Virus record (IMG/VR): IMGVR_UViG_3300042868_005134
Location: 1 to 64,000 of that record
Direction: 5' to 3' (one strand)
Length of the DNA: 64,000 nucleotides
Positions within the stretch are counted from its first letter, which is position 1. Each line of letters opens with the position of its first letter. Under the pieces are notes generated by a model. The model did not search any database, was not told the DNA's origin, and was given only the letters and a program-made list of their open reading frames with translations. The translations under genes and the position numbers were made by a program. This document shows, piece after piece, positions 4,001-63,467 of the stretch.

Positions 4001-5791
4001 TTAGCTCGAAATTATACTAGCGTTATAGGATGGTGTTGGAGTTTGTTGGGCATCGTTCCAGTTGAATCCACTTGTGATTACAACTGTACCGTTTTGGATT
4101 TTATCTAAGAAATCTGTAGGATCGCCACCTGATCCACGCATAATTGTATAATCTAGTGTAGTAGTGTTTAAAAACATAATATTTTCAACACCGTCTTCTA
4201 AATGGTAACTTACGAAAGAAATAGCAGTTACAGCTTTGTTCATTTCTTCAAAATTAACAGACTTACCGTTCCTAGCAATAGCTTTTCCTATCATACCTTC
4301 TGGAGAATCTATACCTAGTTCTTCCATGTGCTGTTTAACAGCGCCCCAGTTGTTTACAATAGACTTCATCGTGTTAAGAAACAAACCAACTGTTTCTGCA
4401 CGTGTGCTGTGCGGTAGTACTTCGTTGTTTAACGCATCGAAGCCTTTCTTATTCCAGTTATACTTTGACGCAGTTTTACCCGATGAAAGGTTAACCATGT
4501 TCGAACTGTACTGTTTAGACTTAACCGAAACAGGATTGCCTTTTTTATCTGTATTTTGGAATGTAGCAGTGGGAGGAGCGTTCTTTTGTATAAGTTCATC
4601 GATAACTTGACTCCAGATTTTCCAACCTGTTGTTGCTTTACCAATGCCCTTACTATTCAAACGGCCACCGTTCTTTTTACCTGCTTTAATCTCATACATC
4701 TCGCCATTGATTTCCAAGTCGCCGTGCGTTTCGGCTTTTCTAGTTGGGCTACCCATCATAGAAAGAGCCATTTCACCAGGACCTACAGCGCCGGATGTTG
4801 TACCTGGACTGTATTCAAAGATATTGTTTTCAGGTCTTGTAAACAAGTCGAACACATCAGCCCATTGGCCATTTAATGCGTCGCGGATGTTTCCGCGATC
4901 TTGTCCAACTACTGCTGTCATGTCGATAACTTTCTTATCAACACATGCTTTTAAGAAGTTTTTAATTTGATCAGGTGTTACGCTTGTTTCACGCTTGTTA
5001 GCCATTTCAATGATTAAGCCAAACAATGCTTGTCTTAGTGTACTAGTAAACTGCTGTGCGTTAACGATTTTTTTCTTTTGTGCAGCTTTTAACGAGCTAG
5101 TATCGATGCTATCGATAGTTTCACTATAGCCTTGTACACGATCACCTAATACTGTTAAGTAGCCAGCAATGTCTTTTAAGAACTTGTCGGCTTCTTCTTT
5201 TTGCTTCTTGTATAAGTCACGCTCTTCGACTGCCGCTTTAAAGCCTTTAAAAGTAGCTGTAGCACTTTCTAACTGTTGATTAGCAAACTGTAATCCGCGA
5301 TCACGTAATTGTGTTTCTTTTGGTGTTTCGGGCTCAACTGATTCTAAGTAACGAATTTCTTCTTTGATAGTTTCTAAGTTGGCTTTGGCTGCTTCTAACT
5401 GATCTGGAAAATGATATTCGCGTCTTCTGTTATATTTTACACCTTCTGTTACAGGCGCTTCTGGAGCAATCGGTGACACTGCTTGGGCAGGTTGTACTGA
5501 AGCAGGCACTGGTTGTACTGGGGCAGGAGCAGGCACTGGGGCAGGAGCAGGCGCTGGAGCAGACTGAGCCAGAGTAGACTTTGCCCTAAAGTATTCTGTA
5601 AACTTGCCAATACCATCAATAATCTTTTCTAGCGTATCGTTAAATTTAACTAGTCGCTGTCCGTCTTCTTCGGGTATTTTGTCAGTTACTGAAGTTAACA
5701 AGTTTACAGTATGTAAAGCATTGTTTGCTGTTAGTCGAGGGTCTGCGGCAGCTTCGTAAAGGTTGGTGATTTTAAATTCGCGAAATCTCAT
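4001..5791 (-). CDS. Large hypothetical protein with coiled coil and putative PD-(D/E)xK nuclease-like domain
   Basis: N-term MRFREF..LYE; Pro/Ala linker; GPGEMAL...HGDLEINGEMYEIKAG resembles E...D-x(n)-ExK. Confidence 0.5.
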   Translation of the reverse strand: MRFREFKITNLYEAAADPRLTANNALHTVNLLTSVTDKIPEEDGQRLVKFNDTLEKIIDGIGKFTEYFRAKSTLAQSAPAPAPAPVPAPAPVQPVPASVQPAQAVSPIAPEAPVTEGVKYNRRREYHFPDQLEAAKANLETIKEEIRYLESVEPETPKETQLRDRGLQFANQQLESATATFKGFKAAVEERDLYKKQKEEADKFLKDIAGYLTVLGDRVQGYSETIDSIDTSSLKAAQKKKIVNAQQFTSTLRQALFGLIIEMANKRETSVTPDQIKNFLKACVDKKVIDMTAVVGQDRGNIRDALNGQWADVFDLFTRPENNIFEYSPGTTSGAVGPGEMALSMMGSPTRKAETHGDLEINGEMYEIKAGKKNGGRLNSKGIGKATTGWKIWSQVIDELIQKNAPPTATFQNTDKKGNPVSVKSKQYSSNMVNLSSGKTASKYNWNKKGFDALNNEVLPHSTRAETVGLFLNTMKSIVNNWGAVKQHMEELGIDSPEGMIGKAIARNGKSVNFEEMNKAVTAISFVSYHLEDGVENIMFLNTTTLDYTIMRGSGGDPTDFLDKIQNGTVVITSGFNWNDAQQTPTPSYNASIISS

Positions 5792-16101: not shown

Positions 16102-16428
16102 TTAGATTCTAAATGACTCGCCGCAACCGCAACGATCCTTTTCATTTGGATTGACAAAGTCAAATCCTTCATTGAGCCCATTACGAACCCAATCCATAGT
16201 CAAACCATTTAGATATACTATACTTTTGGCATCTACCAATACCACAAAGTCAGTTTGGGCATAGTTAGTAACACCTGCTTCGGCTGTGTATTCGTCTACA
16301 TATTCTAACACATAGGCTAGTCCACTACATCCAGTAGTCTTTACACCAATACGAATGCCCACACCCTTGCCACGCTTTTCCAGATTTTGTTTAATCCGTT
16401 TACTTGCTGTGTCGGTTACGGTAATCAT
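16102..16428 (-). CDS. iscA: Fe-S cluster A-type carrier IscA
   Basis: GVKTTGCSGLAY and NPNEKDRCGCGESF. Confidence 0.93.
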   Translation of the reverse strand: MITVTDTASKRIKQNLEKRGKGVGIRIGVKTTGCSGLAYVLEYVDEYTAEAGVTNYAQTDFVVLVDAKSIVYLNGLTMDWVRNGLNEGFDFVNPNEKDRCGCGESFRI

Positions 16429-16783
16429 TTACGGCCGCTTTGATAGCATCTTCTGCTAGGATACTACAGTGTATCTTAACTGGGGGTAAGGCTAGTTCTT
16501 CAGCAATTTCCGAATTACTAAGTTTGATAGCATCATCAAGATGCATTCCTTTAACCATCTCGGTGACAAGACTTGAGCTGGCGATTGCTGAACCACATCC
16601 ATATGTCTTGAAACGAGCATCTCTAATAATGCCATCACTGTCAACCTTTATCTGTAATTTCATTACGTCGCCGCAAGCAGGTGCACCAACCATACCAGTA
16701 CCAATATCAGGATCACTCTTGTCAAAAGATCCGACATTCCGGGGATTTTCATAGTGATCAATCACCTTTTCTGAATAAGCCAT
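16400..16783 (-). CDS. iscU: Fe-S cluster scaffold IscU
   Basis: YSEKVIDHYENPRNVG, APACGDVM, YGCGSAIAS, LPPVKIHCS. Confidence 0.96.
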   Translation of the reverse strand: MAYSEKVIDHYENPRNVGSFDKSDPDIGTGMVGAPACGDVMKLQIKVDSDGIIRDARFKTYGCGSAIASSSLVTEMVKGMHLDDAIKLSNSEIAEELALPPVKIHCSILAEDAIKAAVNDYRNRHSK

Positions 16784-26313: not shown

Positions 26314-27003
26314 TTAGCTGTTTTCCCTGTAGTATTGTTCCACACGCTTACACCATTCTTCAGTCCAGTAGTCAAAGTCTTTGGGTTCTAGCGTAAACTC
26401 TTGATATTCAAAGTCCTTGCTACACATCAGGATAACACCTTTGCGTATGTTAGTGCCGTGTACTTCATTGTGTGCCAGCGCATAGGCTGTTAACTGTAGG
26501 AAGTAGTCGCTGATGTATTCTAGTTTCTTGGGCTTGTTGGTTTGTTTAAAGTCAAGAATACTTTGGTCACCGGCATGTACTCCCACACAGTCAGTAGTTC
26601 CCGCATATAGTTCAGGAAAGTACAAGGGCACTTCACTGCCCCATACTTCAGTAACATTCTTCATGCCTTCAGCAATAACAATACTTGCCATCTTGTGGCT
26701 TTGTTGACTAAAAGGATTTGTGCCTGGATCGTTGATATTACCCTGCTTGACAAAGTCCTCTAGGAACTTGTGCATTCGTGTTCCACGATTGGCAGCTTCT
26801 GTGGTAATCTCTTGTGCCTTCTTTTCGCCCACTGCTTTCCTCCAGTTGGCTAACGCAATGCGTGATTCAGCAGGCTTGGTTTTGTCTAGGATGGTTGTAA
26901 CACTGGGAACTTTTGAACCATCAGGTGTTGCGTACAATCGCTTGCCCTGGGATTCGTCTCTGGCTAATTTGGTATATTGGTATCGTTCAATTAATAATGT
27001 CAT
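26314..27003 (-). CDS. PD-(D/E)xK exonuclease (MGME1/ExoA-like)
   Basis: PSVTTIL, RGTRMH, YAGTTD, ILDFKQT, YFLQLTAYA. Confidence 0.85.
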   Translation of the reverse strand: MTLLIERYQYTKLARDESQGKRLYATPDGSKVPSVTTILDKTKPAESRIALANWRKAVGEKKAQEITTEAANRGTRMHKFLEDFVKQGNINDPGTNPFSQQSHKMASIVIAEGMKNVTEVWGSEVPLYFPELYAGTTDCVGVHAGDQSILDFKQTNKPKKLEYISDYFLQLTAYALAHNEVHGTNIRKGVILMCSKDFEYQEFTLEPKDFDYWTEEWCKRVEQYYRENS

Positions 27004-27359: not shown

Positions 27360-28274
27360 TTATTTTTTTTTTGAGCTTAAAATTGTGCCTAGCTTGCGGC
27401 TGTATTGAATGCTTTCTCTTTTCATTCTGCCTGCGATGTCGTCGCCACCAGTTGCTGGTTCGCTTGCGCCAAACTCGTCACCACCTTCTTCAGGTGCTGA
27501 CATAGTGCTTGGCATTGATGCGCCCATATCAACGGCTGGTGCTGCGCCTGCCATGCCCATAGGAGCTTCTTCGCCTGTTAGGATACTGACTGCCTGTGCC
27601 AATGTTGTGCGATGGCCTTCTAGGTTTGTATATAAATCTTCAAGAGCAGGTTTTACTTTATCATTAAACTGTTGGCTAACATCACTGCCCATTTCGTCTC
27701 TTATAGAGTCGACTAACTCTAACATTGTTTCAGCTTTCATGCTGGATACATCTTCTAACCAACCAGTGACACGATCAACCATATCACGAGCACTCATAAT
27801 TAGAGCTGCCTTTTCTTCTTCGCCTTCTAGTAGTGTGCGCTCGCTGAGTACAGCACGTAACACTTCCATGGCTTCGCCTACGCTTTCTTTCTTTGCCATC
27901 TTAGTGGCAGTGGCATTCATGACTTCATCGCCTTTTTCACCATAACGCTTTTTAAATTCGCCTTTGGTCTTCTTCATGCCTTTGACATACTTTTCTTTCT
28001 TGCCTTTCTCGTCGTCGCTTAGTGTACGCTCTTTGATTGCTTGACGAATAACATCAAGCATGGCACGATTTTTTTGATAGTCGTTGTTTTCTAGTACGCT
28101 GTCAAAACTGTTTGTTTTTTCAAAGCTATTGATTCTTTCTGATAGTTGTAGTTGTACATTTTCTAATTGTACGTCACTGAATTTGTCAATGCTCAAGCGA
28201 TAGCCAAATTTCTTTGCTAGGCTTTCATTTAGCGATTCGCTGGTTAATTTATTCGATAATTCTCTGATTTGCAT
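27360..28274 (-). CDS. Acidic/helical probable head (scaffold/internal) protein
   Basis: MQIREL start; many L-x-E sites; ends SSKKK on an A10 run; TAAATA at 28303-28308. Confidence 0.65.
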   Translation of the reverse strand: MQIRELSNKLTSESLNESLAKKFGYRLSIDKFSDVQLENVQLQLSERINSFEKTNSFDSVLENNDYQKNRAMLDVIRQAIKERTLSDDEKGKKEKYVKGMKKTKGEFKKRYGEKGDEVMNATATKMAKKESVGEAMEVLRAVLSERTLLEGEEEKAALIMSARDMVDRVTGWLEDVSSMKAETMLELVDSIRDEMGSDVSQQFNDKVKPALEDLYTNLEGHRTTLAQAVSILTGEEAPMGMAGAAPAVDMGASMPSTMSAPEEGGDEFGASEPATGGDDIAGRMKRESIQYSRKLGTILSSKKK

Positions 28275-28308
28275 GTTAGCATCCTAAAAGACTTGTTAAT
28301 GTTATTTA

Positions 28309-28740
28309 TCAAAACATGGCCTTAAACTTGGCCTCTATTTGAGATTTAGTTCGTTTAGCCCGTTCGCTAGTTAGTTCCCAGCGCCATAGAGCTAAGTCTC
28401 GTTTGTCTAAATCTTTGTATGTTTTATAGTTGTGTTTGAAAAGTTCAGCATCTGTTGAATTTTGATGATAGTGATTGTCCAAATTCTTAACTTCGTTATA
28501 GGGTGTTAAACTATTAACGCTGTAGTACTTAGCCGCCATCAGAGCACAGGCCTTTAAATTAAATACATCTATTAAATTTCCGCCTATTCTATATAAACTA
28601 TAGCCGCCTGTTTTGTTCTGTTTAATTTTGAAGTTCTTATAGACTATGCTGCCGTTAGGCATCACGGCTATGGGCAGTGTATTTTTAAATTCTGCTTCTA
28701 AATACTGCTCTAATTTTTCTGCTTGGCGTTTAAAATTCAT
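28309..28740 (-). CDS. Hypothetical protein
   Basis: 143-aa ORF, coupled to neighbours. Confidence 0.65.
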   Translation of the reverse strand: MNFKRQAEKLEQYLEAEFKNTLPIAVMPNGSIVYKNFKIKQNKTGGYSLYRIGGNLIDVFNLKACALMAAKYYSVNSLTPYNEVKNLDNHYHQNSTDAELFKHNYKTYKDLDKRDLALWRWELTSERAKRTKSQIEAKFKAMF

Positions 28741-28930
28741 TTGCTATTACTCTAGGATTGTCTGTTCCTATCTTAATTACCAAACTTTTACGTATCATAC
28801 CCTCAATCGTGAAACGATCGTGTTCGTTAAAACTATTGAGGTATACCATACTGTTTAATCGTTCAAGCAAGGCTGCTTCTTCACGGCTAGTGAATATCTC
28901 GAAGTTGCTGATTAGCTCGTTAATTTTCAT
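28730..28930 (-). CDS. Hypothetical protein
   Basis: MKINEL start; 66 aa. Confidence 0.65.
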   Translation of the reverse strand: MKINELISNFEIFTSREEAALLERLNSMVYLNSFNEHDRFTIEGMIRKSLVIKIGTDNPRVIANEF

Positions 28931-31029
28931 CTTAATTTTGCAATAGTTAGCATCTTGTCAAGTTCTTCGTAGTACTGCCTGTCTTCCGATTTTGTTCCGC
29001 CTGCGGGTATGCCTAATTTTGCTCTACCTTGATCAATTACAGAAGGCTGTGTTGCCATTCTTTGACTAACTGACAGTTTAGTTGGGTCTACTGGTGCTGC
29101 TGGGCTTGCAGCTTGTAGTGCTGGTTGATTTACTCCGGGTCTTGGAGCAGCTTTCATCTGAGCGGCAGTTGGGCCGCCTTGCCCTCCACGGCCGCCACCG
29201 GCATTACTATTCATGTTTACACCAGTTCTGATCTGTGTGTTAGCAGTTTGATTTGGTTGATCTAATCTACGTGGATCAGGAGCAGTCCCGCGCCCTGCTC
29301 CTGCTGTACTGGGAGCAACGCCTTGAGGCAACGGAACATTGCCACTGACTGCTTTTGGAAATTGTTGCATTGCTGTTCGTGTAGCTGGTCCCATGACACC
29401 GTCTGCTTTAATTTTTGCGCCAGCAGCAATTAACTTATCTTGTAATGCTTTTATGTTAGGGTCGCTTTTAGCTAGTGTTTTAGCTGGTGCTGCAGGACTT
29501 GCGGCTTGGCCACCTGCTGGTGCTGCAGCGGTAGTTGTCTTCTCACCTGTTTCAGGATTTGTTCCATCTGGCATTGTAACATTCTGACCTGCTGCGTTCA
29601 CACCATTGGCCGCTTGAGTAGCTGCTTGGGCATTGGCTGTCATTGCCGCTCCCATGTCAGCATCATCTTGATCAGCTGCTGTCATTGCTGGAACCGCTGG
29701 GCTTGCTGCTTGTTGTGGTTGGGCAGCGGCAGCATTAGCTGTCATAGCTGCACCTAGTTCAGCATCGTCTCTGTCTGCTTGATTAGGGTCAACTTTTTGT
29801 GCTGTTGGTGTACCAGCTAATTGTTTTATTCTAGCTAATTCTGCTGCTGCTTCTTCTCCGGGATTTCCTGCTCCTGTGGCTGCGCTGGTTGAGTTACCAC
29901 CGGCTGCATTTGCTCGCATAGCTGCTCCCTGCTCAGCATCGTCTCTGTCTGCTTGATTAGGGTCAACTTTTTGTACTGCCGCTGGTGCTGGTGCTGGTGC
30001 TGCCGCTGGTGCTGGTGCTGCCGCTTGTGCAGCCTGTACCACAGCCTGGCCACCGCCGGAAACTAGATCTGAGCCATCTCCTGTTTTGATCGGTTTTCCG
30101 TCGCCACCAACTACTTTTCCAGCGTTTGGATTGGCTGTTTGGAATGCTGCAATATCTTGTTGTGTAGCAGGCTTGTATCCCATTCTTTGTCGAATAACTG
30201 GATCAATAGGAGTTCCCGGAGGAGCATCTTTTAGTTCAGTAGGTTTCATACCAAACAATCCTTTGACTGAATTAAGGTTCTTTTGACCTTGAGCCATTTG
30301 CTTGGCATAGTCGGCGTCAGACATTGGCTCATCGCCAGCCCGCTCAACTAGTTGTTCCGTTAACCTGTCAGCGGCGTTGTGTAGGCCCGCAAGTCTTAAC
30401 ATTCTGATAGTTTCATTCATTTTTTCAATTCCTTCTGTAGTTGCTGGCTGAAACACAGTTTCGCCTGGTTTGGGTTCGTCTGGTTTTTCTCCGCCAGCCG
30501 CGGGAGTTTTGGACAGTACAAAACCTTTACCAGTTGGGTCGCGTGTCAAGCTGGCCTTGGGCGCAATGGTTTGTGTTCCGTCTTTGTTGTCAATAGTTAC
30601 CTTATCACCGGTGGCTGCTAGTATTTGTCCAGGTGCTCCGTCCATCTCAGCAATACTGGATTCTGGTGTAGGATTGTCTTGTTTATCACTGGCAGTTGTT
30701 GTCAGTGTAAACTTTTTATCTCGGTTAAATGGTTTAGACATCATGGTAACTGCCGCTTTGTTAGCCGCTTCTTTACCTCTAAACTGATAAGGCTGACCTT
30801 CTTTATTTTTTAAAAGTTTGCCGTTGATTCGAATGTAGTATGTGCTGGACTGTTCTTTGCGTTGTTGTTCATCTTCATGCCCCAACTCATGTTCCATCTC
30901 ACGACGTTTGAATTCTCGTTTGCCGTAATCCATTTGATCCTGTTGATATCTGTCATAGTTGCCAGGGCTCATGGTATCTGGATTGCTACTACCGTAGCGG
31001 CCGCCTTCATTTACTTGTCTAACTTTCAT
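28927..31029 (-). CDS. Low-complexity modular protein with peptidoglycan-binding-like domain (probable internal head protein)
   Basis: SDPNIKALQDKLIAAG..IKADGVMGPATRTAM resembles PG_binding_1; Ala/Pro/Gln-rich; internal repeats. Confidence 0.6.
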   Translation of the reverse strand: MKVRQVNEGGRYGSSNPDTMSPGNYDRYQQDQMDYGKREFKRREMEHELGHEDEQQRKEQSSTYYIRINGKLLKNKEGQPYQFRGKEAANKAAVTMMSKPFNRDKKFTLTTTASDKQDNPTPESSIAEMDGAPGQILAATGDKVTIDNKDGTQTIAPKASLTRDPTGKGFVLSKTPAAGGEKPDEPKPGETVFQPATTEGIEKMNETIRMLRLAGLHNAADRLTEQLVERAGDEPMSDADYAKQMAQGQKNLNSVKGLFGMKPTELKDAPPGTPIDPVIRQRMGYKPATQQDIAAFQTANPNAGKVVGGDGKPIKTGDGSDLVSGGGQAVVQAAQAAAPAPAAAPAPAPAAVQKVDPNQADRDDAEQGAAMRANAAGGNSTSAATGAGNPGEEAAAELARIKQLAGTPTAQKVDPNQADRDDAELGAAMTANAAAAQPQQAASPAVPAMTAADQDDADMGAAMTANAQAATQAANGVNAAGQNVTMPDGTNPETGEKTTTAAAPAGGQAASPAAPAKTLAKSDPNIKALQDKLIAAGAKIKADGVMGPATRTAMQQFPKAVSGNVPLPQGVAPSTAGAGRGTAPDPRRLDQPNQTANTQIRTGVNMNSNAGGGRGGQGGPTAAQMKAAPRPGVNQPALQAASPAAPVDPTKLSVSQRMATQPSVIDQGRAKLGIPAGGTKSEDRQYYEELDKMLTIAKLR
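29759..29974. repeat. Exact 42-bp direct repeat (29759-29800 and 29933-29974)
   Basis: Encodes QKVDPNQADRDDAE twice. Confidence 0.85.
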
Positions 31030-31742
31030 TTGTGTTCTCCGAGGCTAAGGGCCTTGTCTTGTAATTTGTCAATGTGTTGCTGTAACTGCTGAATAAAACC
31101 CTTGGCTCTTAGCACTTTGAACGCCACGTTCTCCACACTAAATTCGCCACCTTGTTCCAAGCCTGACTGACGTAGTTTTCTAATTTCCTGGTACATCTCT
31201 TTTGCTTCGTCAATGTCATCGGTAGTTAAAGCCTGCATAATCTTATTTAAGTAATTTTCAACTTTAGCCTCAACATCTCCGTCATCTATCTTGATGGTGG
31301 CCATTGTGGGTTCACTGACCCACTTGTTATCTAACACGCTGTATATGCCCAAACTGTGATGCTTTTGATCTTCTGGCTGTACATAAACTTCCACGTCAAT
31401 GCCTTTGATTTTGATGTCGTGTACGTAATTATACTGATTTTTCTTGGCGTCGTAAAGTGGCTTCAGTAACAGTTCGCGCTCTCGAGGCACTGTCACTATG
31501 AGATGTAAATCTATGTCACTTTGAGCTGTGTAACTGTAGGCAGCATTGCTACCTGAAATAGTAACGTCCTTGAGCAGAAGTTCTGGGATGTCGATAAAAT
31601 CTATAAAATGTTTGGCTATTTGTAACAACTTGTATCTAACTTGAGATTTAAGTACAGATCCGCGCCATAGTAGTGGGTTGAGTTCCTTGTGAAACTGAAC
31701 AGCTGAGTCTACTATGCCTTCTGTAAATTCTCTTAGATACAT
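31026..31742 (-). CDS. Pol-beta superfamily nucleotidyltransferase
   Basis: ISGSNAAYSYTAQSDIDLHL (GS...DxD) and third carboxylate VEVYVQ. Confidence 0.75.
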   Translation of the reverse strand: MYLREFTEGIVDSAVQFHKELNPLLWRGSVLKSQVRYKLLQIAKHFIDFIDIPELLLKDVTISGSNAAYSYTAQSDIDLHLIVTVPRERELLLKPLYDAKKNQYNYVHDIKIKGIDVEVYVQPEDQKHHSLGIYSVLDNKWVSEPTMATIKIDDGDVEAKVENYLNKIMQALTTDDIDEAKEMYQEIRKLRQSGLEQGGEFSVENVAFKVLRAKGFIQQLQQHIDKLQDKALSLGEHK

Positions 31743-31745
31743 ACA

Positions 31746-32051
31746 TTACTTTAGAAATTTAAGCACAGTGTCTGCGTGAGCTGATGCCCAACTTACTACC
31801 ACCGCGCCACCGGCAATCATGTAAAGCCACTTTTGTTTCCATTTTTCTAAATCGGAAATTTTAGTTGCCAGTTCTTCATGTTGATTACAAGATGCTGAAT
31901 ACATTTCGTCTAGTTTACCTAACAAACTATCTCTAGTCTGATCCAAGCAATCGTGCATTTCTTTGACATCCCCTTTGAGGTCGTCCATCTTTTCGTTCAA
32001 ATTCTCTACCTTGGTTTCTACTATACCAAGGCGTTCCACTGTAGTTGCCAT
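31746..32051 (-). CDS. Coiled-coil protein with C-terminal TM (XhlA/holin-like)
   Basis: ERLGIVETKVENL coiled coil; LEKWKQKWLYMIAGGAVVV. Confidence 0.55.
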   Translation of the reverse strand: MATTVERLGIVETKVENLNEKMDDLKGDVKEMHDCLDQTRDSLLGKLDEMYSASCNQHEELATKISDLEKWKQKWLYMIAGGAVVVSWASAHADTVLKFLK

Positions 32052-32139
32052 CAAGGGCGTCTCCTATTGCTTAGTTTGGCTGAATGCCGCTATTGTAAGT
32101 TTGTATCAACGCCTTGTGTGCCTAATTGTTATAGTATAT

Positions 32140-32541
32140 TTATTCGCGCAAGTGGAAAACAATATTCTTCCCTGGATCCTGGGTGTTGAATACTCTATGC
32201 GTTTGGGTCATGCTTTCCCCCAAATTGCCAATATAAGGCACTAGATGAAAGTCTTGTTTCAAGAAACCCAATGGATCGTTGTCCATGGTATAGTAGTCTG
32301 CTTCCGTGGTCCAATCAAAACGCCATACTCGCAGTATGTCGTCTGTACCGAATCCCACCAAGGATCCCTTGACTTCTAGCGGCTGTGAGCCACCACTATA
32401 AAATATGTTTGATCGTAGTCCCAGTGTGTGTATCACTGTGTTGAAGTTTTGTTCCTGCTGCCACAGTCGTTCTTTGCCCTGCTCGTGACGATATTGTCCC
32501 GTGTGTGTTATGTCCACTAGTGTGTATAGCTTGTAATTCAT
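32140..32541 (-). CDS. Hypothetical protein
   Basis: YTLVDITHTG...QEQNFNTVIHTLGLRSN; start revised to MNYK. Confidence 0.65.
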   Translation of the reverse strand: MNYKLYTLVDITHTGQYRHEQGKERLWQQEQNFNTVIHTLGLRSNIFYSGGSQPLEVKGSLVGFGTDDILRVWRFDWTTEADYYTMDNDPLGFLKQDFHLVPYIGNLGESMTQTHRVFNTQDPGKNIVFHLRE

Positions 32542-32559
32542 GATGTATTTAACAGTCAT

Positions 32560-32585
32560 AAAAAAGCCCTAGTCGAAACTAGGGC
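32560..32585 (-). terminator. Rho-independent terminator
   Basis: GCCCUAGU-UUCG-ACUAGGGC followed by a U run. Confidence 0.85.
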
Positions 32586-32612
32586 CATCTTCCCATCCCG
32601 AGAAAGATTAGA

Positions 32613-33077
32613 TTAAGACCATGTAACGCCAGTACAAGTGCTGGTAGTTACTGCCACTGTGGCGCCGCCTAGGGCACCACTGATTGCTGCTTCAAGAATA
32701 CTGAAAGTTTCAGTGCCTGTTACAGGATCACCAGTTGTTGCGCCTGGGTTTGTGTTGAAGTCTGGAGCCATGTAAACAATAGTGCTGTCGCCACCGCCTG
32801 ATACTGAAGGTGCAAATACTGCAAATAGTTCACTGGTCACTTGTAGAGCACGTACTACTTTGCTGTAATCGCTGTTAGCTGCTTCAGGTGTCGCTGTGAT
32901 GTCTACACCAGTGATAACCACTTTGTAGCCACGCAGGTTTGGTGTGCTGAATGTCAACAATGGTGATGTTGCTGTACCGTTTAGGCCGTCATAGGCTGCG
33001 CCTGGACTTTGTACTGCTTTTAGATAGTTTGCGGCAATGCTTACACCACCGCTGGTTGTTCCGATTAAACTTGGCAT
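32613..33077 (-). CDS. Probable abundant virion protein (monocistronic)
   Basis: TAAATA (33133-33138), 5' hairpin GCCACA-GAG-UGUGGC, strong GAGGAG SD, own terminator; small-residue-rich. Confidence 0.65.
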   Translation of the reverse strand: MPSLIGTTSGGVSIAANYLKAVQSPGAAYDGLNGTATSPLLTFSTPNLRGYKVVITGVDITATPEAANSDYSKVVRALQVTSELFAVFAPSVSGGGDSTIVYMAPDFNTNPGATTGDPVTGTETFSILEAAISGALGGATVAVTTSTCTGVTWS

Positions 33078-33168
33078 AATAATATCTCCTCTGATTTATG
33101 CTTTAAGCCACACTCTGTGGCCTTTGTAATATTATTTAGTTCAAATGGAAAAAACTAGCCCAAAAGGG

Positions 33169-33834
33169 TTATTTTTCGCGATTGTAACTTTGTGGGTTTT
33201 GAAGGTGTTGAACCAGTATGGGCAGCAGATCAAAGTTAGGCAGTTTGTTTCTAAAGCTGTTTAATATGCGATAGGCCAGTTGCTGTATGTCGCTGTCCAA
33301 AGGATCGTGATAGCTCAACATACGGCGTATTTCTTTATACTCATAGTTTTCTATAGTTAATGCTTGTTCCAACTGCATGTAAAAATAGTTGCCGCGTCCT
33401 GAGTTGCCGGGCAAGCTGTGTAACCAGCCGTTTAGGGCAGTTACAGGCAAGAATGTGCGTTCCCTAGACAGTTTTGCTTGACTGCTATTGAATATAGTTT
33501 CAACACGACTGGCAGGTGCTGTAACAAAGAATATAAAGTTGTGTAGATCCGTTGCGCTGGATCTAAATTCAGTATAACCGCTGTACTGTGAGGTTTGTCT
33601 AGCATAGTTAACGGCAGCATCCTGGCCTTTCTTTAACCTACTTAAGAACTCCAATGCCAATACACAAAGGTACACTGATTCGCAAGCTTCTTTAAAGGTT
33701 ATCTTTACATCAGCTTCATTTTGAATGATACGGGCTTCATGTAGTTCTTTGATAAAACTCATCATGCCTTTTGCTCTTGGTTCCAAGCTGTGTCCGCCTG
33801 CCATTACAGCACGATCCATGTCAGTAAACATCAT
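33169..33834 (-). CDS. Hypothetical protein
   Basis: ATGA overlap with upstream gene; internal MSFIKELHEAR. Confidence 0.65.
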   Translation of the reverse strand: MMFTDMDRAVMAGGHSLEPRAKGMMSFIKELHEARIIQNEADVKITFKEACESVYLCVLALEFLSRLKKGQDAAVNYARQTSQYSGYTEFRSSATDLHNFIFFVTAPASRVETIFNSSQAKLSRERTFLPVTALNGWLHSLPGNSGRGNYFYMQLEQALTIENYEYKEIRRMLSYHDPLDSDIQQLAYRILNSFRNKLPNFDLLPILVQHLQNPQSYNREK

Positions 33835-34982
33835 GTAGGTGTCCAACGCTTTCTAGGCACTAGTTTTACTTTACCAAACTGCTTAGATGCGTCAGGATAA
33901 CGAACTCGGCCTTCGCCATTTGTGTCCCATATTTCGGCCTGCTGGCCTGCTTCCACTTGATCAATGATGCTGTCTTTTAGGTTCATTATCTGTATGACTA
34001 GACTAAAAATAGCAGCCAACGAATTTTTATTCATTTGTGCCAATTCTTTGATCTTGGTCTGCTTGTTGGTACTGACCTTGCTGGTAGCTAGCCAATTGTA
34101 AAAATGATCTGGATTCATGGCACCAAGTTGTTTGGCCTTGGCTGTTTGATTCACGTAGGTGTACAATATATTTTTAAGGTCGCCTAGTCCAGCAGTGCCT
34201 TGTAGAAAGCTATCAATCTGTGCGGCATGTTGATTTAGGTATACTTCAACATCGGTAATGGCATCTGCGTCCACGCTGGGTGTAGTAGAGTTATATATAG
34301 GGCCTTGTACAATTAGGTCAGCTGTTTGATCAAACATGCTAAAGTCGTCCATGGGTTCTTGTTCATCATCGCCCATGCCAAACTCAGGAAAGAAAGCATG
34401 TCCAACCACCATGGCTTGTGCTTGACTAATACGCTTGCCTAGTTCACCTGTGCCTCTTACATGATAGCAAGTTTTACTCTTGGGATTAGGGCAGAATGTG
34501 TACACACCTTGCTGATCTATTTCTGGACGTTTTAAAAACAAGCCGTCAGCATACACAAATCCCACAAAGTCTCTTGGTGTTGCTCTATCAAACAACGGAT
34601 ACAACTCTGCGAACTGTTGAGCAAATTGTTTGCGGCCAGCCAGTTCTTCTGGAGTCTTCGCGCTGCCGCTTTTGTTCACTATAAAATCAGTTAGTTCTGC
34701 CGGGCTAGTGGTCATTGCTCCGCGGCTCCAGCCATTGTGTCCTGCTAGTACTAAGGGTCCACCTTTCTTTGCACGTCCCCAATAGATTTGAGGATTACCG
34801 TCCCACTTCATACGCAGGCTACTAGCACCTTCTGTAGTGGCTAGATCTTTAACGTGACTCAGGGCTTCCAGTGTGCCTTTGCTGCCATGGAAGAATACTA
34901 GATCTTCCAGGTGATTAAATGCTCTGCCTAACTTTTTAGTTACGGCAGCTTCTGCTTCTTTTAGGAACTCTGTTGCTCTCAT
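33831..34982 (-). CDS. KxDG-motif (ligase/ATP-dependent nucleotidyltransferase-like) protein
   Basis: RAFNHLEDL, MKWDGNPQIYWG, YADGLF, GEGRV, VKLVPR resemble ligase motifs I, III, IV and V. Confidence 0.5.
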   Translation of the reverse strand: MRATEFLKEAEAAVTKKLGRAFNHLEDLVFFHGSKGTLEALSHVKDLATTEGASSLRMKWDGNPQIYWGRAKKGGPLVLAGHNGWSRGAMTTSPAELTDFIVNKSGSAKTPEELAGRKQFAQQFAELYPLFDRATPRDFVGFVYADGLFLKRPEIDQQGVYTFCPNPKSKTCYHVRGTGELGKRISQAQAMVVGHAFFPEFGMGDDEQEPMDDFSMFDQTADLIVQGPIYNSTTPSVDADAITDVEVYLNQHAAQIDSFLQGTAGLGDLKNILYTYVNQTAKAKQLGAMNPDHFYNWLATSKVSTNKQTKIKELAQMNKNSLAAIFSLVIQIMNLKDSIIDQVEAGQQAEIWDTNGEGRVRYPDASKQFGKVKLVPRKRWTPT

Positions 34983-35773
34983 ATCTTGCTCAATATATTA
35001 CGGAACCATTCGTTAACTGGCGGTGCGCTTGGCACTTGCGGTACTGGTGTTCGCTGAACCCAATTCTTGTCTTGTTGCGCTTGTGCCAACAAGGCTTGTC
35101 CTTGTTGGGCTGGAAGACTTGACACAATAGCTTCCACACTGTCTATGGCAGTACCGTTAGGCACACCAACTAGTGCCTGTGCTATCTCGTCCCAGTCATC
35201 TGTTACTAGCTCGCCCTTTTTGTTATCAGGTGTACGATTATACAATCCTTCCCAGGCACTGTAAACATAACCTTTTTGTTTGGCTAGCATTGCTAGCATC
35301 AATTGCTTGCTAACACCTTTGTAAGGGCTACCTTTTGGTATCTTGTGTTGATGGTAGCGGGCAATTTTCTTTACTTTGTAAATTGTTTCCAAGTCCACTT
35401 GGTAAGCATTTTCGCCAAATGGCACACGCACAAACACGTTGACACCCGCTTGTGCTGTTTTAAATCCACGCTCATCAAAATAGCTGGCCAGGGCCTTACG
35501 TGCTAGTTTTGCTTGTTCTTTAGGGTCTTGCGAAATCTTTGCTGTTTCAAAGTGCTTGATAACATCTGCTAGTTCAACTTGTAGGTCTAGATCACCACTC
35601 CATTCTTCGGGACTCTTATCAGGGTCTGGTTCATAGGTACTGCCCACAGCTTCAGATGACAAGTCGATGGCGGCCAATTGTTTGTCCACTATGGCTCTTA
35701 CTTCGTCGACAAACTTGGGATTAATTTTCCTGGTGTCTGGGAATATAGCGTTTTTGCTCTCACGGAGTATCAT
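34979..35773 (-). CDS. Pol-beta superfamily nucleotidyltransferase
   Basis: AVGST...SGDLDLQV and YQVDL third acidic residue. Confidence 0.65.
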   Translation of the reverse strand: MILRESKNAIFPDTRKINPKFVDEVRAIVDKQLAAIDLSSEAVGSTYEPDPDKSPEEWSGDLDLQVELADVIKHFETAKISQDPKEQAKLARKALASYFDERGFKTAQAGVNVFVRVPFGENAYQVDLETIYKVKKIARYHQHKIPKGSPYKGVSKQLMLAMLAKQKGYVYSAWEGLYNRTPDNKKGELVTDDWDEIAQALVGVPNGTAIDSVEAIVSSLPAQQGQALLAQAQQDKNWVQRTPVPQVPSAPPVNEWFRNILSKI

Positions 35774-36020
35774 CTTTGTTTTCCTGTATTCGTTTGATGC
35801 CGCGTTTGAATTTAGCTGGTTCAGCAGTTCTAATAGCGTTTAGAAAGCGGCGCTCTAATTCGGCTGCTGTTTCTAAATCGTAGTTTTCACGTATCAACGT
35901 AAGTAGATTAATAGCACTTTCAATCAAGTTAGTGCCACGACTTTCAATAACCAAATCTTTATTACGGTTAACGCCTAAGTCGCTAAGTTCTTGTAGTATT
36001 GACCTTGTGCTTTTTCTCAT
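35760..36020 (-). CDS. Hypothetical protein
   Basis: MRKSTRSILQEL...ELERRFLNAIR; TAAATA at 36044-36049. Confidence 0.7.
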   Translation of the reverse strand: MRKSTRSILQELSDLGVNRNKDLVIESRGTNLIESAINLLTLIRENYDLETAAELERRFLNAIRTAEPAKFKRGIKRIQENKDDTP

Positions 36021-39870: not shown

Positions 39871-40842
39871 TCAATACAGTTTAGATGCTGACCAAGTTTC
39901 AGCTAGTGTTATTTCAGCTTGTGTTGACGTAGCTCCACGAATTACTGCTCCATAGAAGTTGCCTGTAAAGAAGAAAGTTGTGCCGTTTCTGGCTCCAATG
40001 TACAATGGCAAGTTGCCAAACATACTGGCAGTACTACCAGTATCGGTACCTACGTAGGCCAAAGCCGGAGCATTATAACCATTCAACCTTGGGATCAAAC
40101 CCAATGTTCTATCAGACTGTGACAAATCATATAAACCTGTTATCACATCGTGTTGAGGATCGTTGTTGGAAAACACTGCGTAAAGTGATGCTGTTCCTCG
40201 AGCTCCTATGGAATGATCTCGCATGTTGTTTTTGGCAGTGATATAAAATGAACCGTTGACGTTGCCAGCACCAAGTTCTATCATTATTCTTGATGTGCCT
40301 GTGCCTGGTGGAATCAGGTGGAATCCTGTAGTGGCCGTGACTTTGTTTGTTCCAGTAAAGTCTAATGAACCGGTGACCATGAAGTCATCAACTCCATCAA
40401 AATGTAGGGCACTGTACGCAGTTCCTGGATAGTTATAATAAGTTGGGCGTTTGGTTGGGTCACTTTGTGTAGCGTGGGCATTATTACCTGACTTGTCGTT
40501 GATTCGAGCCACTGATTGTCCGCTGGCTGTGACCGGAACAGTTCCCGAAACATCTTGGAACAGTGTTGTGATATCGCTTGGATCATACCAAGCACCTTTT
40601 TCACCTGCGGCAAATAGTGATGCAATTCCAGCGGGCTGTGTACTCCATGGACGGCCTTGAACTAGTCCACCTACGTTAGGATTATCTATAACGCTATTGC
40701 CGCTATACTGTGTAGGTAGTTTTGTGATATCGTAATGGTGTCTTTCATTACCATGCCCTGCACGATCTAAACTGGCGTGATCTAGTTTAGCTTTTTGACG
40801 TAGCTCTTTAGTTGCCAATGTTGAAATTCCGTTAGCTGCCAT
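39871..40842 (-). CDS. Probable virion protein with lectin/LamG-like C-terminal domain
   Basis: WYDPSDITTLFQD, DKSGNNAHATQ, FDGVDD, LYIGAR. Confidence 0.6.
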   Translation of the reverse strand: MAANGISTLATKELRQKAKLDHASLDRAGHGNERHHYDITKLPTQYSGNSVIDNPNVGGLVQGRPWSTQPAGIASLFAAGEKGAWYDPSDITTLFQDVSGTVPVTASGQSVARINDKSGNNAHATQSDPTKRPTYYNYPGTAYSALHFDGVDDFMVTGSLDFTGTNKVTATTGFHLIPPGTGTSRIMIELGAGNVNGSFYITAKNNMRDHSIGARGTASLYAVFSNNDPQHDVITGLYDLSQSDRTLGLIPRLNGYNAPALAYVGTDTGSTASMFGNLPLYIGARNGTTFFFTGNFYGAVIRGATSTQAEITLAETWSASKLY

Positions 40843-51012: not shown

Positions 51013-51340
51013 TTGAGGTTTCCAATATGCTCAATACTAAGTTTAGTATGGAATTTGCACTGGCCACTGCGCTGACACTGGCGCCCTCTTCTATAACTAG
51101 TTTTCCTGTTGTCATTTCGGCTGCGTCATTTGGAGGTATTTCAAATGCATTGAGCATGACAAAATCTACGTTATTTTTTCTAAGCGTAAATGTAACAGTG
51201 GCAGGCACTGAACCTATGTTACTTGCTTGTGCTCCTAAAACGATGGTGGTAAGTCCTGTAGGAGTTGTATATATAGTTTGATTTGTAGTGGTCAACTCGA
51301 ATGTTTTAGTTTTAAACGTATTTAAAGGCAATGTTGCCAT
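51005..51340 (-). CDS. Small virion protein
   Basis: LPLNTFKT..IYTTPTG..IVLGAQASN..GKLVIEEG..LSILETSNE. Confidence 0.65.
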   Translation of the reverse strand: MATLPLNTFKTKTFELTTTNQTIYTTPTGLTTIVLGAQASNIGSVPATVTFTLRKNNVDFVMLNAFEIPPNDAAEMTTGKLVIEEGASVSAVASANSILNLVLSILETSNE

Positions 51341-63197: not shown

Positions 63198-63467
63198 TTA
63201 TCTAGTAAACGGGCTTCTTAATGGACTTAGTGGAGGTGATGGTTCTGTTTCGTTCTGTGTCAGGTCTTGGATGACCGGACTTAGTTTGCCTACCTGCGCT
63301 TTCTTTAATTCCAACTCCTGTTGTAGTGGACTAACCATTACGGGATTGTCGTCTAATTCTGCTGGATCTGTCGCCTGGTCGGTTCCGGACATGTCTATCT
63401 CAGGATCGCCGTCGCCGTTGATCTTGATAGTGATTGGTACATTAATGGTAAATTCTCTTGCTCTCAT
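63198..63467 (-). CDS. Hypothetical protein
   Basis: MRAREF start; MVSPLQQELELKK motif; TAAATA at 63487-63492. Confidence 0.7.
   Translation of the reverse strand: MRAREFTINVPITIKINGDGDPEIDMSGTDQATDPAELDDNPVMVSPLQQELELKKAQVGKLSPVIQDLTQNETEPSPPLSPLRSPFTR

What the first reader, a model, noticed from the sequence alone, without database searches (positions are those of the whole stretch)
27360..36020. Shared T4-CTS-like N-termini mark a putative capsid-packaged, injected protein cargo
Seen: unrelated proteins start alike: MQIREL (28274), MKINEL (28930), MKVRQVNE (31029), MYLREFTE (31742), MRATEFLKE (34982), MILRES (35773), internal MSFIKELHE (33762), also MRFREF..LYE (5791) and MRAREF (63467). 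The recognisable metabolic genes lack this. Known: T4 internal proteins use a 10-aa capsid-targeting sequence (MKTYQEFIAE) removed by the prohead protease after Glu. Inference: this phage tags a suite of enzymes (two nucleotidyltransferases, a ligase-like and a nuclease-like protein) for packaging and delivery at infection, acting before any transcription.
Basis: partly seen in the sequence, partly recalled or inferred. Interest (0 to 1): 0.76.

Follow-up and report, generated by a model that had tools for sequence, protein, structure and literature searches.

The report
T4-like capsid-targeting leaders, jumbo phage
About nineteen unrelated proteins of this uncultured 383-kb T4-core jumbo phage, several of them enzymes, begin with the same short leader, which closely matches the tag phage T4 uses to load proteins into its capsid, so the virion's protein cargo can probably be read from the sequence.

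Summary
In the 383,411-bp phage genome holding the window, M-x-x-[RNTQ]-E-[FL] starts 11 of 427 called proteins against 1.4 expected; M-x-x-R-E-[FLI] starts 8 against 0.7. The conservation is at amino-acid level and the carriers are not paralogs.

The T4 reading holds up computationally:
- The phage has a gp21-type prohead protease, a scaffold and a gp23-type capsid protein in T4 gene order.
- T4's own packaged proteins (IPI, IPII, IPIII, gp24, Alt) carry the same core one residue later.
- 11 of 18 leaders are followed by a phi-x-E|A/S/G site, against 25 of 409 other proteins. That motif is densest in the scaffold and aligns with the T4 gp23 cleavage point.
- The leader is a separable add-on: it is absent from many DUF6267 homologs and has low confidence in AlphaFold models.
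- It recurs in a sister genome on other cargoes.
- In the cultured relative PA5oct, similar leaders are enriched among virion proteins found by mass spectrometry (8/93 against 2/320).

Cargo includes a ligase-fold protein, Pol-beta-fold nucleotidyltransferases, a cytidylyltransferase and peptidoglycan-binding or -hydrolysing proteins. Packaging, cleavage and injection remain untested. The internal MSFIKELHE is not an N-terminus, and the one recognisable nuclease has no leader. This is a new variant of a known kind.

The parts
33831..34982 (-). g053, 383 aa. Leader MRATEFLKE|AE is followed by a DUF6267 domain with a ligase-type fold.
   Evidence: Pfam DUF6267, E 2e-14. In 116 orthologs M1, R2, E5, F6 and E9 are invariant or nearly so. 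K59-W-D-G62, E357-G358 and K373 are conserved like ligase motifs I, IV and V. AlphaFold pLDDT is 93.8 overall but 54-58 for residues 1-20. The top structural matches are all ATP-dependent RNA/DNA ligases, Z 5-7. Diverse homologs exist with and without the leader.
31026..31742 (-). g048, 238 aa. Leader MYLREFTE|G is followed by a Pol-beta-fold nucleotidyltransferase.
   Evidence: phrog_36119, E 8e-48. In 111 orthologs E5 and [FL]6 are invariant and R4 is present in 106. S63-G-S65, D76 and D78 are invariant. AlphaFold pLDDT is 83 overall and 48 for residues 1-10. Foldseek matches aminoglycoside adenylyltransferases and CD-NTases at E 2e-4.
34979..35773 (-). g054, 264 aa. Short leader MILRE|S; probably a second Pol-beta-type nucleotidyltransferase.
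   Evidence: Orthologs at about 30% identity keep MILNEGG. ESM Atlas neighbours carry NTP_transf_2 or Pol-beta palm domains, and fusions with DUF6267, CTP_transf_like or PDDEXK_1 exist. A GS..DLD motif is visible by eye. No Pfam hit above cut-off.
27360..28274 (-). g044, 304 aa. Leader MQIRELSNKLTSESLNE|S; function unknown.
   Evidence: The SLNE|S site is conserved in orthologs at 62% identity. Weak match to phrog_14154 'virion structural protein', E 1e-8. No match in cultured phages.
28303..28309 (-). ATAAATA, a T4-late-promoter-like motif 35 nt upstream of g044.
   Evidence: This is the most enriched upstream 7-mer in the genome: 52 genes against 2.2 expected. It lies upstream of many tail and head genes. 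Coordinates were checked. Its role as a late promoter is inferred from T4.
28730..28930 (-). g046, 66 aa. Leader MKINEL, identical to residues 3-7 of T4 gp24 (MAKINELLRE).
   Evidence: Orthologs keep MKLNEL.
28927..31029 (-). g047, 700 aa. Variant leader MKVRQVNE|G; low-complexity protein with a peptidoglycan-binding domain.
   Evidence: PG_binding_1, E 3e-5, above cut-off. The ortholog in L020 starts MKVRQIKE. Same sub-type as g212 (MKVHQIVSE) and g309 (MKAHQIVDE) elsewhere in the genome.
4001..5791 (-). g006, 596 aa. Leader MRFREFKITNLYE|A; function unknown.
   Evidence: No Pfam, PHROG or PDB match. Only viral neighbours in the ESM Atlas.
63198..63467 (-). g072, 89 aa, acidic. Leader MRAREF, with ATAAATA at 63487-63493.
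   Evidence: The first 19 residues are identical in the G001 ortholog.
33169..33834 (-). g052, not a member.
   Evidence: Upstream residues are conserved in L027, and in L020 the ORF runs on further upstream.
26314..27003 (-). g042, a PD-(D/E)XK nuclease with no leader.
   Evidence: PDDEXK_1, E 3e-5, above cut-off. N-terminus MTLLIERYQY.

Best explanation
The shared N-terminus is a capsid-targeting propeptide of the T4 type. It is a 6-to-17-residue address label with core M-x-hydrophobic-[R/K/N/T]-E-[F/L], usually followed by a hydrophobic-x-E|A/S/G site.

Proposed mechanism: the label docks a protein onto the scaffolding core while the prohead assembles. The gp21-family prohead protease then clips it off after the Glu. 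The mature protein stays inside the head with the DNA.

The label is ancestral on the small gp67-like core protein encoded between portal and protease. In this lineage it has spread to about 19 otherwise unrelated proteins:
- a ligase-fold enzyme;
- one or two Pol-beta-fold nucleotidyltransferases;
- a cytidylyltransferase;
- peptidoglycan-binding and -hydrolysing proteins;
- a protein whose mature end would be a transmembrane helix;
- several small basic proteins.

Shown here: the motif, its enrichment, its modularity, its match to T4's tags, the matching protease, scaffold and cleavage motif, and the enrichment of similar leaders among virion proteins of one cultured relative.

Inferred: actual packaging, cleavage, ejection into the host and early action there.
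For: 1. Enrichment at amino-acid level in unrelated proteins.

2. T4 control. IPII/III MKTYQEFIAE, IPI MKTFKEF, gp24 MAKINELLRE and Alt MELITELFDE share the core one residue later. In T4 the regex ^M...[RNTQK]E[FL] hits only those proteins, alt.-1 and the small gene 61.1.

3. The genome has a Peptidase_S77 protease (E 7e-27), a gp23-type capsid protein (E 1e-82), a portal and a scaffold in T4 order.

4. A phi-x-E|[ASG] site ends at residues 6-20 in 11 of 18 leader proteins against 25 of 409 others (p 7e-9). The same motif is 8-fold denser in the scaffold than the proteome mean (10 sites, p 6e-7), and the scaffold has the highest density among proteins of at least 150 aa. The protease itself ranks second. 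The capsid protein's LAE|S aligns with T4 gp23's LTE|A maturation site.

5. Modularity. DUF6267 homologs begin either 3-6 residues before the conserved GRAFNHLEDL or with a 14-20 residue leader of the same consensus. Cyanophage homologs lack it. AlphaFold leaves residues 1-20 of g053 and 1-10 of g048 at low confidence next to confident folds. The DUF6321 domain of g185 starts at residue 18.

6. Selection. E5, F6 and E9 are invariant in 116 g053 orthologs, and E5 and [FL]6 in 111 g048 orthologs. Residues 2-8 are 61% identical between G000 and G001 orthologs, against 39% for other genes of equal divergence (p 0.02).

7. The sister genome G001 (364 kb, protease 82% identical) shows the same enrichment (12 against 1.7). 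It also has leader-bearing genes with no G000 homolog.

8. The gp67-position protein carries the leader across the clade: G000 and G001 MILRELF, PA5oct MKINDIITE|G, Vibrio phage MKLVELFE|A, CBB MLDEIFE|A. The PA5oct protein is detected in virions.

9. PA5oct virion mass spectrometry. ^M[KRHQ][ILFV].[ED][ILFVM] occurs in 8 of 93 detected against 2 of 320 undetected proteins (p 1.5e-4). A broader regex gives 10/93 against 9/320 (p 0.003). Both hold when short ORFs are removed. PA5oct's leaderless cytidylyltransferase homolog was not detected.

10. Eleven of 18 leader genes lie in operons headed by the late-promoter-like ATAAATA, against 140 of 409 others (p 0.02).

11. Related Rak2-like phages have an inner body of unidentified proteins inside the head (PMC7247149).
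Against: - There is no virion proteome, N-terminal sequence or injection assay for this uncultured phage.
- The strictest PA5oct regex was written after I had seen the detected proteins. A position matrix trained only on G000 did not separate detected from undetected PA5oct proteins (4/93 against 7/320, p 0.22). The PA5oct list also contains obvious contaminants such as ribonucleotide reductase.
- Only one G000 leader protein (g207) has a PA5oct ortholog.
- Seven of 18 leaders lack a canonical downstream site.
- The main window cluster (g055 to g045) has no ATAAATA in front of it, so late expression there is not supported.
- The Rak2-like phage CBB and Vibrio phage 2.275.O show little or no enrichment, so no independent proteome replicates the association.
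- The register differs from T4 by one residue.
Confidence: 0.6

Rival explanations
1. The leader does send proteins into the prohead, but they are core or scaffold components. Like T4 gp22, gp67 and gp68 they are chopped up and expelled before DNA packaging, so they are not a delivered cargo.
For: g207 occupies the gp67 position. g174 has four phi-x-E[ASG] sites and is among the five densest proteins. Several carriers are small, acidic or low-complexity.
Against: The large folded enzymes (g053, g048, g312, g084) have one site, at the leader boundary only, as T4 internal proteins and Alt do. PA5oct leader proteins of up to 482 aa are detected in mature virions.
Confidence: 0.12
2. The leader is a recognition helix for something other than the capsid. 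Candidates are the phage's own chaperone or protease systems (Hsp70-like g011, ClpS-like g009), a degron that times protein turnover, or a shared assembly partner.
For: The genome and PA5oct encode Clp and Hsp70-type components. A short exposed N-terminal helix is the usual form of such signals. The window cluster lacks a late-promoter-like motif.
Against: This does not explain the match to T4's packaged proteins. Nor does it explain the following protease-type site, which is shared with the scaffold and capsid protein, the leader on the head-module protein across the clade, or the enrichment among PA5oct virion proteins.
Confidence: 0.13
3. The similarity reflects shared descent of a short N-terminal module that moved by recombination between neighbouring genes, and it has no function now.
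For: Many carriers are clustered or adjacent: g044-g054, g084/g085, g184/g185 and g307-g312.
Against: There is strong purifying selection on E5, F6 and E9 in more than 100 orthologs. N-terminal conservation is higher than in other genes. Codons differ between carriers. The same consensus appears on distant DUF6267 homologs.
Confidence: 0.05
4. The pattern is a chance or compositional effect, or a translation-initiation preference for A-rich early codons.
For: Lys, Ile and Leu are common at positions 2-6 of all N-termini. The motif was defined after looking at the data.
Against: No permutation that preserves column composition reaches the observed counts. Codons are not conserved. The pattern replicates in G001. 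An independent second feature, the downstream site, co-occurs at p 7e-9.
Confidence: 0.03

Closest known systems
T4 capsid-targeting sequence on internal proteins IPI, IPII and IPIII, on Alt, and the gp24 propeptide (Mullaney and Black 1996, as cited in PMC5694885 and PMC3012670)
   Same: A 10-to-20-residue N-terminal tag on unrelated proteins, with core [polar]-E-[F/L] followed by x-x-E|A/S. The phage has a gp21-family protease, a scaffold core and a gp23-type shell. In T4-even phages the cargoes are diverse and change quickly while only the tag is conserved.
   Different: The register is one residue shorter. There are about 19 carriers instead of about 5. The cargo includes sizeable enzymes (ligase fold, Pol-beta nucleotidyltransferases, cytidylyltransferase, cell-wall hydrolase) rather than small anti-restriction proteins and one ADP-ribosyltransferase. 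The genome is 383 kb, from the PA5oct/Rak2 branch and not the Straboviridae. Nothing has been shown experimentally.
Propeptide-guided ejection and inner-body proteins of phiKZ-like giant phages (phiKZ, 201phi2-1, SPN3US)
   Same: Many head-internal proteins, enzymes among them, are loaded through N-terminal propeptides and trimmed after Glu by a T4-related prohead protease. One, SPN3US gp47, matures to an N-terminal transmembrane helix, as predicted here for g212.
   Different: Their propeptides are mostly 80-130 residues long and have no common short consensus. The cleavage motif there is reported as S/A/G-x-E (my knowledge; one search shows only one example, ALE). There is no sequence similarity to the proteins here.
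Phage P1 Dar system (DarA, DarB, Hdf, Ulx)
   Same: Enzymes and anti-defence proteins are packaged into the head and injected. Incorporation depends on N-terminal regions and head-morphogenesis proteins (papers listed).
   Different: The head lineage is different and loading is ordered and protein-dependent. No short shared consensus tag is known to me.
Inner body of the Rak2-like phages phAPEC6 and 121Q
   Same: Same broad clade. Bubblegrams show a protein mass inside the DNA whose components are unknown.
   Different: The Rak2-like genome CBB shows no clear enrichment of the leader beyond the gp67-like protein. The tag may therefore not identify that body.

Membership tests
T4-type capsid-targeting sequence / gp21-cleaved propeptide | Short tag (about 10-20 aa) at the extreme N-terminus of proteins that are otherwise unrelated | tested here: met
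   18-19 carriers with no BLASTP similarity to one another. The starts are supported by orthologs. No missed alternative starts were found.
T4-type capsid-targeting sequence / gp21-cleaved propeptide | Consensus resembling the T4 tags (MKTYQEFIAE, MKTFKEF.., MAKINELLRE, MELITELFDE) | tested here: met
   The same [polar]-E-[F/L]-x-x-E core, shifted by one residue. g053 EFLKE|A compares with T4 EFIAE|A, and g046 MKINEL with gp24 (M)AKINEL.
T4-type capsid-targeting sequence / gp21-cleaved propeptide | Tag ends at the prohead protease's cleavage motif (hydrophobic-x-Glu) | tested here: met
   11 of 18 against 25 of 409. The motif is validated by its density in the scaffold and protease and by alignment with the gp23 cleavage site. 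Seven carriers lack a canonical site.
T4-type capsid-targeting sequence / gp21-cleaved propeptide | Genome encodes a gp21-family protease, a scaffolding core and a gp23-type capsid protein | tested here: met
   Peptidase_S77 at 91.8 bits and Gp23 at 275 bits, both above cut-off. The order portal, small core protein, acidic protein, protease, scaffold, capsid protein matches T4 genes 20-67-68-21-22-23.
T4-type capsid-targeting sequence / gp21-cleaved propeptide | Tag is separable from the folded cargo | tested here: met
   DUF6267 homologs exist with and without it. AlphaFold gives low confidence for the tag only. A Pfam domain starts after it.
T4-type capsid-targeting sequence / gp21-cleaved propeptide | Tagged proteins are physically inside the mature head | tested here: inconclusive
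   This cannot be tested for the uncultured phage. In PA5oct, leader-like N-termini are enriched among proteins detected by mass spectrometry (8/93 against 2/320). That regex was chosen after seeing the data, and the matrix trained on G000 was not significant.
T4-type capsid-targeting sequence / gp21-cleaved propeptide | Tag is removed by the protease, and it is sufficient to target a foreign protein | not testable with these tools
   Needs N-terminal or semi-specific mass spectrometry and reporter fusions.
ATP-dependent ligase / covalent nucleotidyltransferase superfamily (g053) | Motif I KxDG with the catalytic Lys, motifs IV (EG) and V (K), and the adenylyltransferase fold | tested here: met
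   K59, W60, D61, G62, E357, G358 and K373 are at least 90% conserved in 77 diverse sequences. 19 of the top 20 structural matches are RNA or DNA ligases, with Z 5.3-7.0 over 158-197 residues. The Z-scores are middling, and the substrate (RNA or DNA) is unknown.
Pol-beta-superfamily nucleotidyltransferase (g048) | hG[GS] followed by a DxD catalytic motif on the Pol-beta palm fold | tested here: met
   S63-G64-S65, D76 and D78 are invariant. Foldseek gives E 2e-4 and probability 0.98 to AAD(9), with further matches to CD-NTases, ANT enzymes and TENT5. Pfam NTP_transf_2 is only sub-threshold, E 0.067. The subfamily is undetermined.
Pol-beta-superfamily nucleotidyltransferase (g054) | The same motif and fold | tested here: inconclusive
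   A GS..DLD motif is visible by eye. ESM Atlas neighbours carry NTP_transf_2 or Pol-beta palm domains. There is no Pfam or PDB sequence match, and no model was made.

The most novel reading that the evidence does not exclude
An abundant, uncultured lineage of T4-core jumbo phages has turned the T4 capsid-targeting tag into a general address label. With it the phage loads a ready-made enzyme kit into the head and delivers the kit with the DNA: a ligase, Pol-beta-type nucleotidyltransferases, an NMNAT-like cytidylyltransferase, cell-wall hydrolases and a membrane-inserting protein. The whole injected proteome could then be read from sequence alone and compared between metagenomic genomes.
Probability: 0.33. 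Interest if true: 0.8.

Novelty: new variant of a known kind. Interest (0 to 1): 0.62.

Why it matters
Proteins that a phage injects with its DNA act before any phage gene is expressed, and they decide many contests with host defences. Outside a few model phages they can only be found by virion proteomics, which is impossible for uncultured viruses.

If this leader is a true targeting tag, it gives a sequence-only way to list the head cargo of a jumbo-phage lineage that is widespread in metagenomes. More than 1,400 homologs were found for each of two cargo genes.

It would also show that a T4-type tag can carry large enzymes naturally, and it points to a ligase, nucleotidyltransferase and cytidylyltransferase set as a candidate pre-loaded repair or modification kit. 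It offers candidates for the unidentified internal proteins of related giant phages, and natural variants of a tag already used to engineer T4 as a protein-delivery particle.

Tried and rejected
- Nucleotide-level motif or translation signal: rejected, because codons differ between carriers.
- Paralogy: rejected, with no BLASTP hits among carriers.
- Megablast of the region against cultured phages found nothing. tblastn of g044 and g174 found nothing. PDB sequence searches of g053, g054 and g006 gave nothing useful.
- A position matrix trained on G000 did not transfer to PA5oct. Looser regexes did.
- The PA5oct supplementary proteome table is not held. I used the 'ESI-MS/MS' notes in the GenBank record instead.
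- Replicating the virion association in CBB, whose record marks structural proteins, was abandoned. CBB has no clear leader enrichment (R1 1 against 1.4). Vibrio phage 2.275.O shows only weak enrichment.
- The sigma-70 promoter scan of the window cluster was uninformative: 11 sites against 15 expected.
- The PA5oct paper describes no late-promoter motif that could be compared with ATAAATA.
- Foldseek alone gave no significant match for g053. The VIA-align second look ranked ligases first.
- MSFIKELHE was rejected as a leader. MSLRDI (heme oxygenase) and MSTTEI (ClpS-like) were rejected as false positives.
- Literature searches found no description of a CTS-like tag in the PA5oct/Rak2 clade.

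Full report
**What the window is.** The window is the first 64 kb of a single 383,411-bp IMG/VR virus record. It has no close cultured relative at DNA level. Its major capsid protein is about 70% identical to those of Pseudomonas phage PA5oct, the Rak2-like phages (GAP32, CBB, BF), Vibrio phage 2.275.O and Sinorhizobium phage Phosso. The genome encodes a T4-type head module in T4 order:
- portal, g208;
- a 79-aa protein, g207;
- an acidic 298-aa protein, g206;
- a Peptidase_S77 (gp21-family) protease, g205;
- a 364-aa scaffold, g204;
- a gp23-family capsid protein, g203.

No gene caller was installed, so I wrote one that uses dicodon scores, Shine-Dalgarno strength and start-codon type. It gave 427 genes.

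**The observation.** Counts genome-wide against permutations that keep the composition of each N-terminal column:

| Pattern | Observed | Expected |
|---|---|---|
| ^M..[RNTQK]E[FLIVM] | 14 | 4.1 |
| ^M..RE[FLI] | 8 | 0.74 |
| ^M..[RNTQ]E[FL] | 11 | 1.4 |
| pattern derived from the T4 tag | 12 | 3.5 |

No permutation out of 2000 reached any observed value, and internal Met sites give still lower rates. The Arg codon differs between carriers (CGC, AGA, CGA, CGT), so the conservation is in the peptide. The carriers share no detectable similarity beyond the leader.

After adding close variants (MKV[RH]Q[IV]..E, MILRES) and removing two false positives, I count 18-19 carriers. The false positives are a heme oxygenase whose Pfam profile covers the N-terminus and a ClpS-like protein. 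Eight carriers are in the window: g006, g044, g046, g047, g048, g053, g054 and g072. The others, in genome coordinates:
- g084, 69767-71200;
- g085, 71197-71448;
- g174, 120346-121332;
- g184, 129496-129873;
- g185, 129870-130163;
- g207, 168671-168910;
- g212, 174604-175926;
- g268, 247373-247780;
- g307, 272732-272971;
- g309, 273602-274312;
- g312, 275039-275896.

The 'internal MSFIKELHE' is not a start, because the ORF's upstream residues are conserved in relatives.

**Comparison with T4, from the T4 record itself.** I translated the T4 genes. They read: ipII and ipIII MKTYQEFIAE, ipI MKTFKEFTST..ITE, gp24 MAKINELLRE, alt MELITELFDE, gp22 MLKEQLIAE, gp67 MEGLIE. The packaged, protease-trimmed T4 proteins therefore carry [polar]-E-[F/L]-x-x-E with Glu at position 6. 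The proteins here carry it with Glu at position 5. The pair g053 MRATEFLKE|A and T4 MKTYQEFIAE|A shows this best, and g046 begins MKINEL exactly as gp24 does after its Ala2.

As a positive control I called 263 genes on the whole T4 genome. The regex ^M...[RNTQK]E[FL] then hits only ipI, ipII, ipIII, gp24, alt, its truncated duplicate alt.-1 and the 54-aa gene 61.1. In a phage where the answer is known, this kind of N-terminal pattern is specific for capsid-targeted proteins.

**A second, independent feature: the cleavage site.** A hydrophobic-x-E motif followed by A, S or G, ending at residues 6-20, occurs in 11 of 18 leader proteins and in 25 of 409 others (odds ratio 24, p 7e-9).

That this motif is what the phage's protease cuts is supported in three ways:
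- The scaffold g204 has ten such sites. This is the highest density among proteins of at least 150 aa (2.75 per 100 aa against a proteome mean of 0.33; p 6e-7). The protease itself ranks second. T4 gp22 and gp21 behave likewise, according to the literature quoted.
- The capsid protein's YLAE|S aligns with T4 gp23's FLTE|A. I know that T4 site to be the maturation cleavage point; the alignment is.
- PA5oct has FLVE|N at the same place.

**The leader is a modular add-on under selection.**
- Among 116 orthologs of g053 (68-99% identity), M1, R2, E5, F6 and E9 are invariant or nearly so, while position 4 varies among R, N, K and H.
- Among 111 orthologs of g048, E5 and [FL]6 are invariant and R4 is present in 106. 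The linker that follows has an indel (TE|G or TQE|G).
- Across representatives of the DUF6267 family at 50% identity or less, the conserved GRAFNHLEDL is preceded by either of two things. Some have 3-6 residues (MKKYGRAF.., no leader). Others have a 14-20 residue leader of the same consensus: MRAKEFLAE.., MLLRELFTE.., MKINEVTEA.., MRIRHLIEA...
- Cyanophage homologs lack the leader.
- AlphaFold models are confident for the folds (pLDDT 93.8 for g053, 83.4 for g048). They are not confident for the first 20 residues of g053 or the first 10 of g048.
- In g185 the DUF6321 domain begins at residue 18.
- Between G000 and the sister genome G001 (IMGVR_UViG_3300042350_002797, 364,554 bp, protease 82% identical), residues 2-8 of leader proteins are 61% identical. 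Other orthologs of the same overall divergence reach 39% (p 0.02).
- g084 and its ortholog are 32% identical overall but share MRFNEFK.
- G001 repeats the enrichment (12 against 1.7). It also has leader-bearing genes with no G000 homolog, as expected for a portable tag on a changing cargo.

**Link to the head.**
- The small protein encoded between portal and protease, the position of T4 gp67, carries the leader across the clade: G000 and G001 MILRELF, PA5oct MKINDIITE|G, Vibrio phage MKLVELFE|A, CBB MLDEIFE|A.
- The PA5oct GenBank record marks the 93 proteins found by virion ESI-MS/MS, and this protein (gp150) is one of them.
- Across PA5oct, ^M[KRHQ][ILFV].[ED][ILFVM] matches 8 of 93 detected and 2 of 320 undetected proteins (p 1.5e-4). 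One of the two undetected proteins is a 64-aa ORF next to two detected carriers.
- A broader regex gives 10/93 against 9/320 (p 0.003), and ^M...E[ILFVM] gives 7/93 against 9/320 (p 0.045). The first two survive removal of proteins under 70 or under 100 aa.
- Caveats: I wrote the strictest regex after seeing the detected set. The matrix trained on G000 alone was not significant. The PA5oct list contains contaminants.
- PA5oct's homolog of the cytidylyltransferase g312 has no leader and was not detected.
- Only g207 has a PA5oct ortholog. The other cargoes are lineage-specific, as T4-even internal proteins are.

**Expression.** ATAAATA is the most enriched 7-mer upstream of genes (52 genes against 2.2 expected). 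It resembles the T4 late promoter TATAAATA (my knowledge). It precedes many tail, baseplate and head genes. It lies directly upstream of 11 of 44 orthologs of PA5oct virion proteins, against 44 of 383 others (p 0.016). Eleven of 18 leader genes lie in operons headed by it, against 140 of 409 others (p 0.02). The window cluster g055 to g045 has none, apart from the one in front of g044, so its timing is open.

**The cargo.**
- g053 is a member of the ligase/covalent nucleotidyltransferase superfamily. KWDG, EG and a C-terminal Lys are conserved, and RNA and DNA ligases take 19 of the top 20 structural ranks (Z 5.3-7.0).
- g048 has the Pol-beta nucleotidyltransferase motif and fold. Its matches are aminoglycoside adenylyltransferases and CD-NTases at E 2e-4.
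- g054 is probably a second nucleotidyltransferase. In other viruses its relatives are fused to DUF6267, cytidylyltransferase or PD-(D/E)XK domains. In cyanophages the DUF6267 gene sits next to cytidylyltransferase genes. These proteins therefore probably work together.
- g312 is a cytidylyltransferase with the GRFNPPHxGH signature.
- g084 combines GDSL hydrolase, PG_binding_1 and SleB-like cell-wall hydrolase domains, and g047 has PG_binding_1. Both make sense for proteins that leave the head and cross the cell wall.
- g212 would mature at LNE|A to an N-terminal transmembrane helix. SPN3US gp47, an inferred ejection protein, is described the same way.
- g085, g185, g307 and g309 are small and strongly basic.
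- The only recognisable nuclease nearby, g042, has no leader.

**Limits and breadth.** The expansion is lineage-specific. CBB (Rak2-like) shows no clear enrichment and Vibrio phage 2.275.O only a weak one. No paper I could find describes such a tag in this clade. Rak2-like phages are reported to hold an inner body of unknown composition. Packaging, cleavage, ejection and early action are all inferred.

**Verdict.** The T4-like targeting-tag reading is the best explanation (confidence about 0.6). The stronger claim of an injected enzyme kit that acts before transcription is plausible but untested (about one in three). It is a new variant of a known mechanism, of above-average interest because it is directly testable.

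Noticed in passing
T4 record NC_000866, 18966-19130 (-), gene 61.1 (locus L075): This 54-aa hypothetical protein starts MKTFKEFIKE, the same leader as internal protein IPI. It is the only hit of the T4 regex that is not a known packaged protein or its duplicate. It may be an unrecognised capsid-targeted peptide.
   Followed up: partly
genome 74-3026 versus 380712-383354 (window 74-3026): The first three genes (signal-peptide-like N-termini) are repeated at the other end of the record at 88-93% protein identity. This could be a diverged terminal duplication or an assembly of a terminal repeat.
   Followed up: no
whole genome; in the window for example 28303-28309, 63487-63493 and upstream of 39871-40842: ATAAATA is 24-fold enriched within 60 nt upstream of genes (52 genes). 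It looks like the T4 late promoter and often lies 11-35 nt before the start codon.
   Followed up: partly
window 6479-7018, 7855-9750, 16102-16783: Host-like auxiliary genes. The heme oxygenase has Pfam E 5e-19. An Hsp70/DnaK-like protein and IscU- and IscA-like proteins were recognised only by their N-terminal signatures.
   Followed up: no
window 49678-63179: A 2562-aa protein (53626-61314) is built of many internal repeats. Its neighbours at 49678-51012 and 61338-63179 share the repeats. It is probably a fibre or adhesin family.
   Followed up: no
L034 183-1040 (Synechococcus phage S-CRM01 g127): A T4-like cyanophage cytidylyltransferase-like protein starts MKLFNQFFKEAE before its GRHNPGHLGH motif. 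This is a T4-register leader on the same enzyme type as g312, and the gene lies two genes from the g048 homolog.
   Followed up: no
window 33169-33846 versus L020: In the 93%-identical relative L020, the g052 homolog lies in a much longer open frame. The match begins at residue 181 of that stop-to-stop frame, which suggests a fusion or a different upstream gene.
   Followed up: no
window 27360-28274 and genome 129870-130163: PHROG phrog_727 (450 aa) matches g044 with its N-terminal part and g185 (DUF6321) with its C-terminal part. In other phages the two leader-bearing proteins therefore exist as one fused protein.
   Followed up: no
window 31746-32054: g049 is a 101-aa coiled-coil protein with a hydrophobic C-terminal segment and weak XhlA/holin-like Pfam hits. 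It sits inside the leader-gene cluster but has no leader.
   Followed up: no
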